Positions 57,372 through 64,000 of a stretch of 64,000 nucleotides of DNA are shown piece by piece. The notes under the pieces are model-generated. The model did no database searches. It worked only from the letters and a program-made list of their open reading frames with translations, and was not told the origin of the DNA. The position numbers were made by a program, and so were the translations under genes. Where the stretch lies: sequence record OQ722176.1; one strand, 5' to 3'. Position 1 is the first letter of the stretch. Every line of letters starts with the position of its first letter.

Positions 57372-57668
57372 ATGGAATTTGGAAATGCGTTAGCATCGTT
57401 AAAAGCAGGTCGAAAACTCTCACGTGAGGGTTGGAATGGTAAGGGTATGTTCATTGTGTTAATGCCCGCACTTTACTTGCCGCCTTTTAATACACAAGAC
57501 ACAATGCGTAAAGTGAATGACCGTACTGCAAAACATATCGGCGAAGACACGCCTTTAGATAGCCAACCGTATATCGCTATGTTTACGGCTGAACAAAAAT
57601 GGCAACCGGGCTGGGTTGCGTCTCAAGCAGACATTCTAGCCGACGATTGGATTGTACACGAAGAATAA
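57372..57668 (+). CDS. tad2: DUF2829 / Tad2-like anti-Thoeris signal sponge
   Basis: FG.AL..LK.G.K..R.GWNGKGMF...PW/GW.ASQ.DILA.DW signature. Confidence 0.8.
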   Translation: MEFGNALASLKAGRKLSREGWNGKGMFIVLMPALYLPPFNTQDTMRKVNDRTAKHIGEDTPLDSQPYIAMFTAEQKWQPGWVASQADILADDWIVHEE

Positions 57669-57670
57669 AG

Positions 57671-57699
57671 AAAAGGAGAGCAATTGCTCTCCTTTTTTT
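57671..57699. terminator. Bidirectional terminator between convergent units
   Basis: AAAAGGAGAGC-AATT-GCTCTCCTTTT plus further Ts. Confidence 0.85.
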
Positions 57700-57702
57700 C
57701 GG

Positions 57703-58278
57703 TCACTGTACGTTCTTAGTTCGTGTGTCAATCTCGTTAACTTTCGTCTCAAGATTATCAATACGAGTATTAAGTAATTTCCCATCTTTCCCCGTAAATC
57801 GGTCAGATGAGTCAACGTTAATTAATGTCTCGACTCTGGCTAAATCAGTCTCAATTTTAGAGTATCTTGTATGGGTACCGTCTATCTTAGTCATGATCGC
57901 GCTTTGGGTTGTTTTAAGACCTTCAACTGAATTTACTAGATTTTTGTCGCCCAATTCCGAAGAACTCCTCAATGCTTTTACTTCGCTTTCAATACTACCA
58001 TATTTCACTAGCATTTCATCTTGCTTCTTAACTATAATGGCTTGCGCCCCTTCTAGTCCGATCAATTGTTGTGCTTGTGTCGCGTTTGTTAGTTTGATGT
58101 CAGTCATTTCTTGCATTATTTTAGCGTTTTGCTCAACTGCGGTCTTGCCTTGTTCTTGTACAACTTGTAATGCTTCCTGCATACTACCGTAGTTAGTCGC
58201 CACGCTCATTGAGGTGATAGCCAGAGGGATAAGAATCGTACCGATCACAGCTAATAACAATTGTGCTGCTTTGCTCAT
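57703..58278 (-). CDS. Late membrane-anchored coiled-coil protein (holin T position)
   Basis: Single N-terminal TM then long heptads; own TATAAATA promoter. Confidence 0.7.
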   Translation of the reverse strand: MSKAAQLLLAVIGTILIPLAITSMSVATNYGSMQEALQVVQEQGKTAVEQNAKIMQEMTDIKLTNATQAQQLIGLEGAQAIIVKKQDEMLVKYGSIESEVKALRSSSELGDKNLVNSVEGLKTTQSAIMTKIDGTHTRYSKIETDLARVETLINVDSSDRFTGKDGKLLNTRIDNLETKVNEIDTRTKNVQ

Positions 58279-58323: not shown

Positions 58324-58331
58324 TATTTATA
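58324..58331 (-). promoter_or_regulatory. T4-type late promoter
   Basis: Perfect TATAAATA on minus strand. Confidence 0.8.
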
Positions 58332-58337
58332 CTTCTA

Positions 58338-59356
58338 TCAGCGAAGTAAGCGTTTCCACCACGGACGTTTAAGTTCTTTCACTTCAGATTGAAGTTCTTC
58401 AACTTTTCCATTAAGCTCGTTGATTGCGTTAATCAATAGAGCAGTCATGTTACCGTAGTCTACACTCAACATCCCTTCAGAATCTTCGCGTACGACTTCA
58501 GGAAGCACTTTCTGAACGTCTTGAGCAATCACACCCGCGTAGCGTGTATCAGGGTTTACATCGTCGATACGACTGTATGTGTAACCTTTAAGCTGACTGA
58601 CTTTGCCGATAGCGTTGTCAATCTCTTCCAAGTTATCTTTCAATCGTTTATCTGAGTAAGCCGTGATGTTAGCTAGAGCAGTGAATGAACCATCAACGTC
58701 AAATGTGAAGTACTTGCTGTTTTTACCAACCCATAGACGAGTCTGACCAGTTTGGTCGAGTACATCCATTGCGTTTAGTCGAGCACCAGCCGTATCTTTG
58801 TAACGCCACAAGTATGATGCAGTTGAACCAGTAGTCGGTCCGCCGCCCATTTCAATGTATGCGTTTTTATCAATACCCCATGTGGTGTGCGCACCTTTAC
58901 GAATACCAATCGAATCGTTGTTTCCAAGAGACCCAACTGAGATCAGCGTATCGTGTCTCAACACACCAGCACTACCGCAGTAGATACCCGTTGAAAACTG
59001 ACTATGTGGGTTCAATCTCAACCAAGAGTCATTGCTACCACCAATCGCTGTCTTGCCGTTGTAAGTCACACCTAGACCAGAAGTAGTTCCCGTCGCGTTA
59101 AACGTAGTACTAGTCAATGTACCACCAACCACAGACAAGTTGCCAGCCGATGAACAATCTAGACGAATATCATAATCGGCTGTGCTGTTAGTTGTGTGGA
59201 AGTCGATGTATCGAGCAACTTCTAGAACACCAGATGATGTTACTTTTGCAAGGTACTTGTTGATGATACCCGCGAATGTTTGAGTAGTCGAGAACTCAGT
59301 ATTCTGTGCGAATCTAGAGTTTGATTCAGACTCAGTATAGTAACGACCATCATGCG
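58338..59356 (-). pseudogene. C-terminal half of long tail fibre A with peptidase S74 chaperone, out of frame as sequenced
   Basis: YIDFH...DY..RL, AYSD.RLK.N...GYTY...AGVIAQ....VDYG; no independent start; in frame with 61686 once 52 bp are removed. Confidence 0.75.
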
Positions 59357-59418
59357 TGTGCGAATCTAGAGTTTGATTCAGACTCAGTATAGTAACGACC
59401 ATCATGCGTGTGCGAATC
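59305..59418. repeat. Exact 52-bp tandem duplication (2 units plus 10-bp microhomology)
   Basis: Units start at 59305 and 59357; TGTGCGAATC recurs at 59409. Confidence 0.95.
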
Positions 59419-61686
59419 GTTAGCAACTGTAACTGCCAATGTAACGTTTGAGCTACCATTGATAGACACCGAACCAGTTGCATCACCTGATAGAGACAAC
59501 GTTCTAGCAGTTGTCCATGTATCTGCATTCGGGTGGTAGTTGTCCATGAACACTCGCTGACCAACTGCATTTGATGTAGTATCAGACGTGTTGTTCTTGT
59601 AACCATACCACAATTGAGTCATTGCAGACCCATCAGCGAATGAATACAATGAGTGTCTATATTTCGAGCCGCCGTTATGACCCCACTGAATCCAGTTGAT
59701 GAATGATGTCGTCGGAGCACCGGCAACTGAGCTAGATGAACCAGTTACAAAATCATCAGTCTGAGTATTCCAGTTCTGGCTTTTCGGTCTCAAATTGTTG
59801 TGGTTATGACTGTTATCAGCAACAGCAACTGACAACGTAGCATTAGCTGAACCGTCCCATGAAACTGAACCACTCGCATCACCAGATAGTGTTAGAGTTC
59901 TTGCAGTACCCCACTTCGCAGTTGTAATATCCGCAGTACCATTGAATGAAGTACCATTGATCAAACGTCCAGTCGTTAGACGGTCTGCATTTGGGTGATA
60001 TGCGTCGTGGAATACAGTGTTACTACCGTATTTCAACGTGCCGTTAACAGCAGACAATACCCCATCAATACCCCAGAAATTCGGATGATAGTTTCCACCC
60101 GTATCAACGAATTCATGATATACCTCAACAACGTAGTTCGATGTATGCCACGTTGAAACAGCAGGATCCCCATCAGCATCAATGAAGAAACGAATACGGT
60201 TACTGCTTGAACCACTCTGAGTAGTATTAATAACCGACCATGCACCATTTATATTCGTGAACGTTGCACTAGATGCAGTATCCGTGGTACCTGTACCCGT
60301 TACAACACCTCGAACTCTAATAGACCCACGAGTGATTGCTGAACCATCTTGATCTAGCAATTTAGCAGGCGCGTTTATGTTTACACTATGATCGCGTCTG
60401 TACTTGTACATTGCACCGTAGATGTCGCCCGTAATCTCTTTGGCAGTCCATGTAACATTACCAGTCCCGTCTACTGTCTTACCAGTTGCACCGATTGTTA
60501 GAGTACGAGCAGTCGTCCACTTAGCCGCAGATGATGCAGTAGATGCGTTACCTACAAGATCGCCGACAAAGTTCTGTGCGGTCACATCAGCAGCAAAATA
60601 AGCACCGCCACCAAAGTTAACCCAGAATGGGTATGTGATACCACCATCAGGCGAGTATGCAAGAGAGCCGCCAGTTCCTGAGTGCAATATCAAAGGCGTA
60701 CCGGCTGGTTCAGTTATACCATTACCGCCAATAGGGAAAGCTGACATACCATGAAGCGAATCATTCACAGCTACAGTTGGGCTACTATCAGACTCAGTGA
60801 AGAAGTATTTCCCAGTAATTGTGTCGCCGGTTACGTTTGCAAAACGAGCATCAGATTCTGTCTCAGTGTAGTATCGACCGTCATGCGTATGTGAATCGTT
60901 CGCTACAGTCGCTGTAACGGTCACAGTCGCGTTAGCCGACCCATCTATAGACATAGACGCAGAACCCGTCACATCGCCCGTTAGAGTCGTTGTGAGCGTG
61001 CGTGCAGTAGTCCACTTATCTGCATTTGGGTGATACCCGTCATGAAACACATTGTTGTTTTTGTATTTCAGAACAGCAGTTGTTGCCAATAGACCATCAG
61101 TCGTAGTTGTACCCACTTGTAACTGACCATCAGTTCTGATATTCGACGCACCAAAGTAAACGCCTTGCGTGAATGTAAGCTGATCGTTGATACGTAGCCA
61201 AGAATCGAATCCACGAAATGCTGTTTTCGAGTTGATGTCGATATTTTCAATCATGAAGTTCGCGGCAGTCGCATCAATACGGAAACGAGTTGTTGCAGTG
61301 TCGTTCTCACGAACGCTGAAATTGCCACCATCGTTGATTAGATACCAACGCTTCGTACCGTCATTATCTTGAAGCAATAGACGCGGAGAACTACCACGGA
61401 TTTCAATTTCATTTGCCGTGTTAGTCAGTTTACCGGTCATTGTATCACCGATCTTCTGAACGTAACCACCTCCCGCTATAGGGGCGAATCGTGCATCAGC
61501 TTCAGTCTTTGTAAACGCCGAAGTCGTACCACCGTTACCTAGTTCGCCTGGCAGTGGTGTGTCGTGTTCTGTGTAAATTTTGTAGCCTTGGTACAGAATC
61601 GTATCGCCTTGCGGATCAAAGCGAAGATTGCCTCCGTGCCAGACTATGTTACCACCAATTGCGGTAGTTGATCTTAGTTCTGCCAT
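59350..61686 (-). CDS. Long tail fibre A, N-terminal 778 aa (gp36-like start); 1098 aa if the duplication is removed
   Basis: MAELRSTTAIGGNIVWHGGNL...P.GD..LY..YKIY.E resembles T4 gp36; repeated KWTTARTL.L.GD..GS.S.DGS.N.TL.V.VA.DSH.H modules. Confidence 0.85.
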   Translation of the reverse strand: MAELRSTTAIGGNIVWHGGNLRFDPQGDTILYQGYKIYTEHDTPLPGELGNGGTTSAFTKTEADARFAPIAGGGYVQKIGDTMTGKLTNTANEIEIRGSSPRLLLQDNDGTKRWYLINDGGNFSVRENDTATTRFRIDATAANFMIENIDINSKTAFRGFDSWLRINDQLTFTQGVYFGASNIRTDGQLQVGTTTTDGLLATTAVLKYKNNNVFHDGYHPNADKWTTARTLTTTLTGDVTGSASMSIDGSANATVTVTATVANDSHTHDGRYYTETESDARFANVTGDTITGKYFFTESDSSPTVAVNDSLHGMSAFPIGGNGITEPAGTPLILHSGTGGSLAYSPDGGITYPFWVNFGGGAYFAADVTAQNFVGDLVGNASTASSAAKWTTARTLTIGATGKTVDGTGNVTWTAKEITGDIYGAMYKYRRDHSVNINAPAKLLDQDGSAITRGSIRVRGVVTGTGTTDTASSATFTNINGAWSVINTTQSGSSSNRIRFFIDADGDPAVSTWHTSNYVVEVYHEFVDTGGNYHPNFWGIDGVLSAVNGTLKYGSNTVFHDAYHPNADRLTTGRLINGTSFNGTADITTAKWGTARTLTLSGDASGSVSWDGSANATLSVAVADNSHNHNNLRPKSQNWNTQTDDFVTGSSSSVAGAPTTSFINWIQWGHNGGSKYRHSLYSFADGSAMTQLWYGYKNNTSDTTSNAVGQRVFMDNYHPNADTWTTARTLSLSGDATGSVSINGSSNVTLAVTVANDSHTHDGRYYTESESNSRFAHA

Positions 61687-61716: not shown

Positions 61717-61724
61717 TATTTATG
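61717..61724 (-). promoter_or_regulatory. T4-type late promoter
   Basis: CATAAATA on minus strand, 30 nt before ATG. Confidence 0.7.
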
Positions 61725-61731
61725 CAGATAC

Positions 61732-61755
61732 AAAAAAAGCTCCCGAAGGAGCTTT
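61732..61755 (-). terminator. Intrinsic terminator with C(UUCG)G loop
   Basis: Minus strand AAAGCTCC-TTCG-GGAGCTTTTTTT. Confidence 0.88.
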
Positions 61756-61757
61756 AA

Positions 61758-63096
61758 TTAACTTAGTAGTGCCTCAAGTCTAGCAAGACGTTCTTCAAGA
61801 GCTTCGCGCTTGCGTTTCTCTTCTTTGATACCCTCGATTAATAGACCAACCATGTTTCCGTATGCAACTGCATAGTGCCCATCAGCGTCACCACCCGCTT
61901 CAACAACAGCTTCTGGCAGAACTTCAAGAACTTCTTGAGCAATTACACCAGTCTGTCTCGGACATTCAATGTCAGTGCGGTCGTACGTGTAACCGTTCAG
62001 CCTATCAATTTTATCAAGCGGGTTTTCGATTCGCTCAATGTTAGTTTTAACTCGCGCATCAGAATATGCAGTAATGTTACTAGCAGACTGAATTGGCTGA
62101 TAGTAATAGAACCCACTCGTTGCATCGGTTGAGTTATGAACCCATGACGTGTTTCTAGCACCGAAATGCCATGTGATCCCGTTATCAGAACGGAAAAGCC
62201 AACTACCCTCGTTTGACGAGTTCTGCATATATCGAGAAGTATCACCACCAAGACCAATAGCGTTCTTGACCATCAAGTTACCATTAGTCGTCAATGACAT
62301 TGCACCATCAGTAACAGCGTCTGACTCATCACGCCATAAGAAACCGCGTGTTGTTGAGTTGTTCATAGTGAACGTCATTGCATAATCAGTGCCCAGCCAC
62401 CCAAACGATAGGTTGTTCGTCATACCGATTGAGTATGAACCACTAGACCAAACTCTGATTTTATCAAATGACGCAGTTCCAGTATGAATCAATGTTCCGC
62501 CAAGAGTAAAACTACCAGTCGTGCTTGAGTGGTTGTGACTGTTATCAGCAACAGTAACTGCCAACGTAGCGTTAGCTGAACCGTCAATTGATACTGAACC
62601 ACTTGCATCACCAGACAAGCTCAATGTACGAGCAGTCGTCCACTTATCAGCCAGTGGGTGGTAATGTGACCCATAAGGTGCACGCCAACCCGGTGAGTAT
62701 GATGTACCGTTACTCACATAGATAAACTCTTGTCTCTGAGTTGCACCAGATGCTGTAGTCGGTGTAGTTACTCGAATCGTACAGCCTGTGGTTGAGTTAC
62801 CAATTACTTCAATAACCGAACCAGCCGTTCCGAATACGCCATATCCCGTATCTACTGTAACCTGTGCAGCGTATGACCAACTACCACGACAAACCCAGTA
62901 GAACGTAGAAAACGCACCCCTCGAACTCAACAATGAAACGAATTCATCAGTTGTTACACGGTTGTTTGTACCAAATGATTGCTGATCGGCACTATATGTA
63001 CCTGTGATCTCTTGAGCAGACCACGCTACGTTACCCGTTCCATTCACTGACTTGCCGGTTTTACCAACTGTCAACGTACGAGCAGTTGTCCACTTA
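61758..63096 (-). CDS. Tail fibre B with peptidase S74 chaperone, 5-prime truncated
   Basis: KWTTARTL modules; AYSDARVK.NI.RI...GYTY...TGVIAQEV...VAYGNMVGLLIE; frame stays open up to the poly-T run. Confidence 0.85.
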
Positions 63097-63116
63097 TTTT
63101 TTTTTTTTTTTTTTTT
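63097..63116. other. Run of exactly 20 T; probable contig junction or gap filler
   Basis: Cuts fibre B mid-motif; a second 20-T run lies at 63834-63853. Confidence 0.7.
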
Positions 63117-63121
63117 GTTTT

Positions 63122-63262
63122 ATGATGCGCGCAGATGGCGCGCCTAAAATGTACGGTAAAACCGAAGCCAATGACCGCCAGCGACCAATAAGCGATCAAA
63201 AGCGGGCAAAGGCACGTAAAAAGCGCAAAAAGGCTCAGAGAGCCGCACGAGGGCGTAAATAA
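63122..63262 (+). CDS. Small basic ORF in foreign fragment
   Basis: ...KRAKARKKRKKAQRAARGRK; TAATG overlap with next gene. Confidence 0.5.
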   Translation: MMRADGAPKMYGKTEANDRQRPISDQKRAKARKKRKKAQRAARGRK

Positions 63263-63777
63263 TGAGTATATGTCAAAAGAAAGACGGGTCTTTGTGTACC
63301 TCATGCTGCGACGTTGTGGTTTTGTCGTCACCGTTTAGTCAACAGGAATTAAAAAAGGTTAGGCGGGCATTCAACAAACGCGCGAACAAATACGAACCGC
63401 GCGGGATGTTACGCCGGATCTCAAAACGTCGTGCCAAAAAGAAAAACCCTTATATCGTGGCATTTCGTGAACGAGCGGATCGGCAGGACAAAAACAATAA
63501 GCCGACGTATTACAGTTGTATTCACATGAAGCGCGGTAAGTGCCAGATCTACGAAAGCCGCCCTTATATGTGCCACGGCTACCCGCTTTACAGCCAACCC
63601 GCCGACGATTGGATCAGAGGTCGATACTCGAACATCCCTGAATATGATCACGAGTGCGGTTTTTATAATGACCAAGCCCTGATCGCTACCTTCCCCTTAG
63701 TGGACATTAAGCAAGCCTTGGAGGATGAGCAGCGAACTAAACCCGATAACCTAACGCGAGGCACTTTACATGCCTGA
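63262..63777 (+). CDS. YkgJ/FliB-like CxxCC cysteine-cluster protein
   Basis: CTSCC...C.H....CQIYESRPYMCHGYP. Confidence 0.75.
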   Translation: MSICQKKDGSLCTSCCDVVVLSSPFSQQELKKVRRAFNKRANKYEPRGMLRRISKRRAKKKNPYIVAFRERADRQDKNNKPTYYSCIHMKRGKCQIYESRPYMCHGYPLYSQPADDWIRGRYSNIPEYDHECGFYNDQALIATFPLVDIKQALEDEQRTKPDNLTRGTLHA

Positions 63778-63833
63778 CAACGTACAACGAGCTTTAACCA
63801 GTTACATAGTTTGCACGGCGTTAGAGTTCACCC

Positions 63834-63853
63834 TTTTTTTTTTTTTTTTTTTT
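63834..63853. other. Second run of exactly 20 T
   Basis: Interrupts an ORF starting at 63770 and is followed by a startless open frame. Confidence 0.7.
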
Positions 63854-63854
63854 G

Positions 63855-64000
63855 CTAAACGAAAACCGCTCAAACTCCCTTAATACACACGCTAAGTTAG
63901 TCACTAACCTAGGCGGTTATGATGACGACCTCAATAGCCAGTGGGACAAAGGGCGCATGGACTTGATCCCCGATGACGCGTTATTACCCTACGCCGGAGG
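63855..64000 (+). CDS. Fragment of an unidentified ORF (no start or stop in window)
   Basis: Open frame LNENRSNSL...WDKGRMDLIPDDALLPYAG. Confidence 0.4.

What the first reader, a model, noticed from the sequence alone, without database searches (positions are those of the whole stretch)
58338..61686. Exact 52-bp tandem duplication frameshifts the long tail fibre and detaches its tip and S74 chaperone
Units 59305-59356 and 59357-59408 are identical and are bounded by a 10-bp microhomology (TGTGCGAATC), encoded in different frames by DSHT and SRFAQ. Removing one unit gives 3297 bp, one uninterrupted 1098-aa ORF from 61686 to 58338. As sequenced, the protein stops at 778 aa with no receptor-binding tip or chaperone. 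This is either an assembly artefact or a real, reversible slippage switch that turns fibre A off while fibre B remains, which would be a simple host-range phase variation.
Basis: partly seen in the sequence, partly recalled or inferred. Interest (0 to 1): 0.66.

Follow-up and report, generated by a model that had tools for sequence, protein, structure and literature searches.

The report
Duplication-broken spare tail fibre gene
One of two neighbouring long-tail-fibre genes of the published Vibrio phage vB_VspM_VS2 is split by an exact 52-base tandem duplication that no related phage carries; it is most likely a recent one-off knockout of a dispensable fibre, not a programmed host-range switch, and an assembly error cannot be excluded without reads.

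Summary
Units 59305-59356 and 59357-59408 are identical and are followed by a third copy of their first 10 bases. The gene stops at 778 aa. With one unit removed it reads as a 1098-aa ORF. The window is GenBank OQ722176.1, Vibrio phage vB_VspM_VS2, a KVP40-like Schizotequatrovirus sequenced on Illumina and assembled with SPAdes.

Sister phage VS1 has one unit and an intact 1098-aa gene. All 48 other phage records with this stretch also have one unit. The part downstream of the frameshift evolved under the same purifying selection as the upstream part (dN/dS 0.042 against 0.031), so the break is very recent. The perfect 10-bp microhomology is private to VS2. This is the only exact tandem duplication in the 250-kb record.

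The layout, repeat-42 bp-repeat-42 bp-repeat, is the classic product of microhomology-mediated duplication in T4-type phages. A de Bruijn assembler cannot invent it from a 10-bp repeat. However, the record is uncurated (127-bp end overlap, 1.4-kb foreign tail) and no source reads were reachable.

My odds: real one-off loss-of-function mutation about 0.6, artefact or minority allele about 0.27, evolved phase switch about 0.06. This is an ordinary kind of event. The same duplication was also flagged from an overlapping window of this scan.

The parts
59350..61686 (-). Fibre A as sequenced: 778-aa N-terminal adaptor plus shaft, ending 2 residues after the duplication junction (stop at 59350-59352)
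   Evidence: ORF list and translation. phrog_11011 'long tail fiber protein distal subunit' E 3.8e-242; PF03903 E 2.2e-14.
61555..61686 (-). N-terminal 44 residues shared with fibre B (38 of 44 identical); inferred attachment module
   Evidence: Translations. The rest of A and B is only 30-35% identical. Several tail-fibre PHROGs match only residues 1-48.
59357..59408 (.). 52-bp unit, the copy read first by the gene; read in the correct fibre frame (DSHTHDGRYYTESESNSRFA)
59305..59356 (.). 52-bp unit, the copy read second by the gene; read one base out of frame, with the stop after 2 codons
59409..59418 (.). 10-bp microhomology TGTGCGAATC, third copy. The other two are the first 10 bases of each unit, at 59305-59314 and 59357-59366
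   Evidence: VS1 has TGTGTGAATC at the homologous site.
58338..59304 (-). Detached C-terminal part of fibre A: receptor-binding tip plus chaperone, out of frame with the N part
   Evidence: Colinear with VS1 residues 777-1098 at 97.7-99.4% identity. phrog_11011 positions 1037-1290 of 1291, E 5.5e-66.
58488..58655 (-). Peptidase_S74 intramolecular chaperone / autocleavage domain with an SDKRLK Ser-Lys motif
   Evidence: PF13884 E 5e-16, profile positions 1-58 of 58. Aligns with the C-terminus of the long-tail-fibre distal subunit in PDB 6f45.
61717..61724 (-). CATAAATA, a 7 of 8 match to the T4 late-promoter consensus, upstream of fibre A (inferred promoter)
   Evidence: Read from the sequence; no experimental support.
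61736..61755 (-). Terminator-like hairpin plus T-run between fibre B and fibre A
61758..63096 (-). C-terminal part of fibre B (gp36+37-fusion type) with its own S74 chaperone; the gene continues at the start of the GenBank record
   Evidence: PF13884 E 1e-16 and phrog_11011 E 2.7e-130. Window 62970-63096 equals record bases 1-127. The frame is 1094 codons stop-to-stop when the ends are joined.

Best explanation
This is a real, very recent, spontaneous tandem duplication in the sequenced vB_VspM_VS2 stock. During replication or recombination the nascent strand re-paired between two 10-bp direct repeats lying 52 bp apart. In the gene these repeats encode D-S-H-T and R-F-A-Q of one HxH shaft motif. 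The re-pairing copied the 52 bp a second time. Because 52 = 17x3+1, the frame shifts and translation stops two codons later, at the boundary between shaft and tip. The 778-aa product keeps the N-terminal adaptor and shaft but loses the receptor-binding tip and the C-terminal S74 intramolecular chaperone that such trimeric fibres need to fold, so fibre A is most likely absent or non-functional. The phage still grows because it has fibre B, with the same N-terminal adaptor, and several other fibre-like receptor binders. Loss of an accessory fibre may be neutral or even favoured during plaque propagation on one host. The two units with the flanking repeat form a 62-bp direct repeat, so loss of one unit should restore the gene at an elevated rate. 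That reversibility is a by-product of the structure, not an evolved switch. Shown: the anatomy, the uniqueness to VS2 and the recency. Inferred: the mechanism, the loss of function, the tolerance and the reversibility.
For: - **Parent allele.** Sister phage VS1 (OK905446.1) has one unit and an intact 1098-aa ORF that differs from the one-unit VS2 reading by 79 nt and 8 aa.
- **Recency.** dN/dS between VS1 and VS2 is 0.031 upstream of the junction and 0.042 downstream. The two units are identical, while VS1 differs at 4 positions inside the unit.
- **Mechanism.** The layout repeat-42-repeat-42-repeat, with a single microhomology copy between units, is what experimentally evolved T4 shows at 6-10 bp microhomologies (PMC9391042).
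- **Not a graph artefact.** The genome was sequenced on Illumina HiSeq and assembled with SPAdes (PMC11484964). The record start repeats 127 bases, which fits k=127. No word of 14 bases or more from the unit occurs elsewhere in the window or in the first 6 kb of the record, so a de Bruijn graph has no loop here unless reads carry the unit-unit junction.
- **Otherwise clean consensus.** This is the only exact tandem duplication in 250 kb. Of 177 large ORFs shared with VS1, only fibre A, fibre B (cut by the record ends) and one gene with a 1-nt indel are interrupted.
- **Loss of function.** The S74 domain lies downstream of the break. In phages such domains fold the upstream trimer (PMC8326128).
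- **Tolerance.** Schizotequatroviruses carry at least seven fibre-like receptor-binder candidates (PMC12028318). Capsular polysaccharide is reported as a VS2 receptor. Lambda side-tail-fibre frameshifts are selected on plates: 15 of the 19 isolates with a mutated stf gene, out of 21 sequenced (PMC2762979).
Against: - No read-level evidence exists. The only public run that holds part of the stretch is a distant relative in a 2014 wastewater metagenome, and it does not bridge the units. The truncated proteins occur only in the GenBank record itself.
- The record is flagged UNVERIFIED, carries no annotation, and still has an untrimmed 127-bp overlap and a 1,418-bp chimeric tail from another phage. 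Nobody curated it.
- From my memory of the software, not tested here: SPAdes' gap closer and GapFiller both accept a minimum overlap of 10 bases, the same length as the microhomology. That leaves a narrow route to a false join.
- Loss of function, tolerance and reversibility are inferred, not measured.
Confidence: 0.6

Rival explanations
1. Assembly or pipeline artefact, or a minority allele promoted to the consensus: the phage population mostly has one unit and an intact 1098-aa fibre A.
For: - The record is an uncurated SPAdes output flagged UNVERIFIED, with a 127-bp terminal overlap and a 1,418-bp tail. The first 712 bp of that tail are 99.9% identical to an unrelated 80-kb Vibrio siphophage, and the pieces are joined through poly-T runs.
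- The duplication is exact and unique among 49 records.
- The downstream part shows no decay.
- A join of two sequence ends on a 10-base overlap would give exactly this structure. That this is a default minimum in SPAdes' gap closer and in GapFiller is my recollection, not tested.
Against: - A 10-bp repeat cannot make a loop at k of 21 or more, and the unit shares no word of 14 bases or more with other sequence in the window or the first 6 kb of the record. The junction words must therefore come from reads.
- A false 10-base join needs both sequence ends to fall exactly on the repeats, inside a normally deeply covered phage genome.
- No other such duplication exists in 250 kb, and only one other frameshift against VS1 in 177 ORFs.
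- The poly-T chimeras sit at the contig end and are explained by low-complexity words, a different failure mode.
Confidence: 0.27
2. Evolved, reversible phase variation: gain and loss of the 52-bp unit is a selected ON/OFF switch for fibre A that lets the population alternate between two distal fibres using the same attachment module.
For: - Fibres A and B share 38 of 44 N-terminal residues and so probably the same docking site.
- The break sits exactly at the shaft/tip boundary.
- A 62-bp direct repeat should lose a unit at an elevated rate (inference from T4 recombination).
- The downstream part is fully intact.
Against: - Only VS2 among 49 records has two units, and the junction is absent from IMG/VR and metagenome contigs.
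- The microhomology is not conserved. VS1 has 9 of 10, and the roughly 19 other copies of the same protein motif in six phages (VS2, VS1, QD01, KVP40, phi-pp2, VH7D) share only 3-5 bp.
- There are just two copies of a long unit, unlike contingency loci.
- The DNA has no special structure (fold z = 0.95).
- No within-population data exist.
Confidence: 0.06
3. Functional split gene: the shaft (778 aa) and a separately translated tip-plus-chaperone protein (355 aa, from the ATG-ATG at 59405-59400) are both made and still give a working fibre.
For: A gene caller on the public record calls a 355-aa product that starts at the ATG inside the first-read unit and runs in the correct downstream frame.
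Against: - No purine-rich ribosome-binding site precedes that ATG (sequence).
- There is no promoter-like site between the parts. The only exact TATAAATA nearby lies downstream of the gene.
- S74 chaperones act in cis on the chain they end (PMC8326128).
- The 355-aa piece lacks the N-terminal adaptor.
- No relative is split here.
Confidence: 0.03

Closest known systems
Microhomology-mediated tandem duplications and amplifications in phage T4 (rII duplications, Hp17, dmd-tifA amplification; PMC9391042 and the papers it cites)
   Same: A T4-type phage. The unit is bounded by a short direct repeat (6-10 bp in T4, 10 bp here), and only one copy of the repeat lies between neighbouring units. The events are spontaneous and recent.
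   Different: The T4 cases are kilobase-sized gene amplifications selected for dosage. Here the unit is 52 bp, lies inside a gene, and destroys the reading frame. Its formation in vivo is inferred, not observed.
Lambda PaPa stf frameshift (side tail fibre gene split into orf401 and orf314), and stf loss selected on plates (PMC2762979)
   Same: An accessory tail-fibre gene of a laboratory phage stock is split into two ORFs by a frameshift while the phage stays viable. Loss of an extra fibre can be favoured in structured culture.
   Different: In lambda the lesions are indels (a single-base deletion in lambda PaPa, from my own knowledge) in a siphophage side fibre. Here the lesion is a 52-bp duplication in a myophage long-tail-fibre distal subunit. 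No fitness data exist for VS2.
Fibres with a C-terminal Peptidase_S74 intramolecular chaperone (endosialidase endoNF, T5 L-shaped fibre; the long-tail-fibre distal subunit in PDB 6f45)
   Same: PF13884 matches over the full profile, with an SDKRLK Ser-Lys motif at the C-terminus of a trimeric fibre.
   Different: Autocleavage and chaperone dependence are not tested for this protein. In VS2 the domain is out of frame with the shaft.
Programmed phage host-range switches (Mu Gin and P1 Cin fibre inversion, diversity-generating retroelements, repeat-tract contingency loci)
   Same: The outcome would be alternative receptor-binding states within one phage population.
   Different: There is no invertase, no reverse transcriptase, no conserved repeat tract, and no recurrence in relatives. 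The resemblance is at most functional.

Membership tests
Schizotequatrovirus / T4-type long tail fibre distal subunit | Sequence membership in the annotated family | tested here: met
   phrog_11011 E 3.8e-242 (N part) and 5.5e-66 (C part); PF03903 E 2.2e-14.
Schizotequatrovirus / T4-type long tail fibre distal subunit | Conserved position next to a second distal-fibre gene, downstream of the asiA block | tested here: met
   Same order in QD01, KVP40 and phi-pp2. The KVP40 homologue is an intact, unannotated 1085-aa ORF.
Schizotequatrovirus / T4-type long tail fibre distal subunit | One uninterrupted reading frame from adaptor to chaperone | tested here: not met
   Split into 778-aa and 422-aa ORFs in VS2. 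Intact in VS1, KVP40, phi-pp2 and QD01.
Peptidase_S74 intramolecular chaperone autocleavage domain | Full-length match to PF13884 at the C-terminus | tested here: met
   E 5e-16, profile positions 1-58 of 58, residues 318-373 of the 422-aa ORF.
Peptidase_S74 intramolecular chaperone autocleavage domain | Ser-Lys pair at the cleavage site | tested here: met
   SDKRLK aligns with SDRRIK of PDB 6f45 chain A. That these are the catalytic residues comes from my knowledge of the family.
Peptidase_S74 intramolecular chaperone autocleavage domain | Autocleavage, and need of the domain for trimer folding | not testable with these tools
   Needs expression and SDS-PAGE or mass spectrometry.
Microhomology-mediated tandem duplication (T4 type) | Unit flanked by a short direct repeat, with one repeat copy between units | tested here: met
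   A 10-bp repeat at 59305, 59357 and 59409; compare PMC9391042.
Microhomology-mediated tandem duplication (T4 type) | A single-copy parent allele exists | tested here: met
   VS1 and 47 further records have one unit.
Microhomology-mediated tandem duplication (T4 type) | The junction is present in real DNA molecules of the phage | not testable with these tools
   No source reads were reachable.
Phase-variable (contingency) locus | Both alleles coexist and interconvert in one population | not testable with these tools
   No reads of the stock.
Phase-variable (contingency) locus | Recurrence of the switch in related genomes | tested here: not met
   1 of 49 records; none in IMG/VR or metagenome contigs.
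Phase-variable (contingency) locus | Conserved repeat element that drives switching | tested here: not met
   The perfect 10-bp repeat is found only in VS2; elsewhere the match is 3-5 bp, and 9 of 10 in VS1.

The most novel reading that the evidence does not exclude
The 52-bp unit is gained and lost often enough in VS2-like populations to act as a simple ON/OFF toggle for one of two distal fibres that dock through the same N-terminal module. A lysate would then always hold both host-range types.
Probability: 0.06. Interest if true: 0.6.

Novelty: new member of a known kind. Interest (0 to 1): 0.2.

Why it matters
For the record itself: OQ722176.1 should not be read as 'VS2 lacks a fibre tip', or as '250,514 bp', without checking reads. 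One fibre gene is frameshifted, the other is cut by the record ends, and the last 1.4 kb belongs to another phage.

For biology: if the duplication is real, VS2 and VS1 form a natural near-isogenic pair (98.7% protein identity in this gene) that differs in whether fibre A is present. That would let one test cheaply which receptor fibre A reads in KVP40-like phages, whose OmpK-binding protein is still unidentified (PMC12028318). It would also allow a direct measurement of how fast a 52-bp duplication reverts in a T4-type phage. As a phenomenon it is ordinary.

Tried and rejected
- **Reads.** Its contigs are diverged relatives that do not bridge the units, so they say nothing.
- **Exact-protein look-ups.** The 778-aa and 355-aa products were found only in the GenBank record.
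- **Junction and unit-end patterns.** No hits in IMG/VR or in metagenome contigs.
- **Related loci in IMG/VR.** Only KVP40 and VH7D came back, both with one unit.
- **Whole genome file.** None is held for this window. I fetched both records in pieces instead.
- **Recurrent breakage of fibre A in the genus.** KVP40's RefSeq record has no CDS there, but the ORF is intact (1085 aa), so this is only an annotation gap.
- **Hairpin-assisted slippage.** Rejected: the DNA fold is no better than shuffles (z = 0.95).
- **Downstream 191-aa ORF as a gp38-like adhesin for fibre A.** Rejected: it is a membrane-anchored coiled-coil protein with its own late promoter.
- **Not attempted.** Structure prediction and the large protein searches were not run, because the family assignment was already clear.
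Full report
**Identity of the window.** The stretch 58338-61686 is 100% identical to GenBank OQ722176.1, Vibrio phage vB_VspM_VS2. This is a 250,514-bp record flagged UNVERIFIED, without annotation, in genus Schizotequatrovirus (KVP40-like, Straboviridae). Window base 1 is record base 186,001. The phage was isolated on Vibrio splendidus, sequenced on Illumina HiSeq and assembled with SPAdes (PMC11484964).

**The observation.** Bases 59305-59356 and 59357-59408 are identical. Bases 59409-59418 repeat the first ten bases of the unit, TGTGCGAATC.
- On the minus strand, an ORF runs from 61686 to a stop at 59350-59352 and gives 778 aa.
- A second ORF, 59606-58338 (422 aa), is nonsense for about 80 residues and then carries the true downstream frame.
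- Removing one unit gives 3297 bp and a single 1098-aa ORF.
- The repeat is far beyond chance. The next longest direct repeat at spacings of 20-150 bp in the window is 15 bp. No other exact tandem duplication with a unit of 10-400 bp exists in the whole record, and none exists in the sister genome.

**What the gene is.**
- The N part matches phrog_11011 'long tail fiber protein distal subunit' (E 3.8e-242) and Pfam Phage_T4_gp36 repeats.
- The C part matches the end of the same PHROG (E 5.5e-66) and, over the full profile, Peptidase_S74, the intramolecular chaperone of endosialidases and fibres (E 5e-16).
- The S74 segment, with an SDKRLK motif, aligns with the C-terminus of the long-tail-fibre distal subunit in PDB 6f45.
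- The gene sits where QD01, phi-pp2 and KVP40 have an intact distal-fibre gene of 1046-1109 aa.
- Directly upstream lies a second distal fibre, B, of the gp36+37-fusion type. It is about 1088 aa in VS1 and has its own S74 domain.
- A and B are only 30-35% identical overall but share 38 of their first 44 residues. I read this as a common docking module; that is an inference.
- A terminator-like hairpin (61736-61755) and a 7 of 8 late-promoter match (61717-61724) separate B from A.

**Comparison with relatives.**
- Sister phage VS1 (OK905446.1) is colinear and has one unit. Its 1098-aa ORF differs from the one-unit reading of VS2 by 79 nucleotides and 8 residues.
- A sensitive search with 251 bp around the site found 49 phage records. 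In the listed records other than VS2 whose match spans both units, the matched span is 52 bp shorter than the query, so each holds one unit.
- The unit-unit junction is absent from IMG/VR, and a 22-nt word from the end of the unit is absent from metagenome contigs.

**Age of the break.** Between VS1 and VS2, dN/dS is 0.031 for codons upstream of the junction and 0.042 for the 322 codons downstream (14 synonymous and 2 non-synonymous changes). The detached part was therefore under full selection for essentially the whole divergence. The two units are identical, although VS1 differs from them at 4 positions inside the unit. The break is very young, or not real.

**Mechanism.** In the one-unit allele, the 10-bp repeat occurs twice, 52 bp apart, inside one shaft motif (DSHTHDGRYYTESESNSRFAQ). 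The two-unit allele has repeat-42-repeat-42-repeat. This is the signature of microhomology-mediated duplication. In experimentally evolved T4, amplifications start and end at 6-10 bp microhomologies, and one copy remains between the units (PMC9391042). The perfect repeat is private to VS2. VS1 has 9 of 10, through a synonymous TCA/TCG serine codon. The roughly 19 other copies of the same protein motif in fibres A and B of VS2, VS1, QD01, KVP40, phi-pp2 and VH7D share only 3-5 bp. The single-stranded DNA has no unusual fold (z = 0.95).

**Artefact or real.** I could not reach reads of the stock. The one run found is a distant wastewater relative, and the truncated proteins exist only in the GenBank record.

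Indirect evidence favours a real allele:
- The record start repeats window 62970-63096 exactly (127 bases), which fits a SPAdes contig at k=127.
- A 10-bp repeat cannot form a loop at any k SPAdes uses.
- No word of 14 bases or more from the unit occurs elsewhere in the window or in the first 6 kb of the record, so the junction words must have been in reads.
- The rest of the consensus is clean. Of 177 ORFs of 150 aa or more shared with VS1 at 90% identity or more, only fibre A, fibre B (cut by the record ends) and one gene with a 1-nt indel are interrupted.

Evidence against:
- The record is plainly uncurated. After base 63096, homology to VS1 stops at a run of about 25 T. Then come 712 bp that are 99.9% identical to the unrelated siphophage vB_VpaS_VP-RY-9, a run of 20 T, and about 660 bp more of foreign sequence.
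- From memory, SPAdes' gap closer and GapFiller both accept 10-base overlaps, the same length as the microhomology. This leaves a narrow route to a false join.

I put a real majority allele at about 0.7 in total and an artefact or minority allele at about 0.27.

**Consequence, if real.** The 778-aa product keeps the adaptor and shaft but loses the tip and the chaperone. In phages this domain folds the upstream trimer and then cleaves itself off (PMC8326128), so fibre A is probably not assembled. The phage can tolerate this for three reasons:
- Fibre B is intact once the record is circularised (1094 codons stop-to-stop).
- Schizotequatroviruses carry at least seven fibre-like receptor-binder candidates (PMC12028318).
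- VS2 is reported to adsorb through capsular polysaccharide.

Loss of an accessory fibre can even be selected during growth in soft agar: 15 of the 19 lambda isolates with a mutated side-tail-fibre gene carried frameshifts (PMC2762979). A separately translated 355-aa tip protein is called by a gene finder. It has no ribosome-binding site, promoter or adaptor, so I do not expect it to function.

**Phase variation.** Any tandem duplication can lose a unit, so revertants should exist in a lysate and would be selected on a host that needs fibre A. That is reversibility as a by-product. Every feature I could test for an evolved switch failed: recurrence, a conserved repeat element, and multiple units. 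The one feature I could not test is the coexistence of both alleles. I give an evolved switch about 0.06.

**Verdict.** The anatomical reading is correct. The most likely explanation is a one-off, recent, microhomology-mediated knockout of a dispensable fibre paralogue in one laboratory stock. An assembly artefact is the main rival. This is an ordinary kind of event, and interest is low. Mapping the authors' own RNA-seq or genomic reads would settle it. An overlapping window of this scan flagged the same duplication, which is not independent evidence.

Noticed in passing
window 63097-64000 (continues to the record end, 514 bases beyond the window): Chimeric tail of the GenBank record. After about 25 T come 712 bp that are 99.9% identical to the unrelated ~80-kb Vibrio siphophage vB_VpaS_VP-RY-9, then 20 T, then about 660 bp more of foreign phage sequence that looks like part of a DNA polymerase gene. 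This is not part of VS2; it is probably cross-sample reads glued in through low-complexity words.
   Followed up: yes
window 62970-63096 and record bases 1-127: The record start repeats these 127 bases exactly, so the deposited 'linear' genome is a circular SPAdes contig opened inside the fibre B gene. Fibre B looks truncated (438 aa) in the record but is intact (1094 codons stop-to-stop) when the ends are joined. The true genome length is about 1.5 kb less than the published 250,514 bp.
   Followed up: yes
L008 3621-6878 (KVP40 NC_005083.2 161039-164296): The reference genome of KVP40 has no annotated CDS over an intact 1085-aa ORF that is the homologue of fibre A. The locus tags jump from KVP40.0297 to KVP40.0298.1.
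   Followed up: partly
window 57703-58278 (-), promoter at 58324-58331 (-): A conserved 191-aa protein of unknown function (phrog_15749) lies directly after fibre A. It has one N-terminal membrane helix and a long coiled coil, an exact T4-type late promoter TATAAATA in front, and a strong terminator behind (57671-57696). It is not gp38-like.
   Followed up: partly
window 57372-57668 (+): A 98-aa protein next to asiA carries PF11195 (Tad2-like, DUF2829) in the precomputed Pfam hits. It is a possible anti-Thoeris sponge.
   Followed up: no
VS2 record 165,495-166,158 (outside the window; locus L027): The only other frameshift of VS2 against VS1 among 177 large ORFs is one extra C (CCC against CC) at record base 165,666. 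It splits a 221-aa membrane protein with a TIGFGD potassium-channel selectivity-filter motif.
   Followed up: partly
window 59118-59351 against QD01 (L003 4001-4234): Homology of the fibre A tip region to phage QD01 is patchy: 88% identity over 234 bp, ending at the shaft/tip motif. This fits the HxH motif acting as a recombination joint between fibre modules.
   Followed up: no
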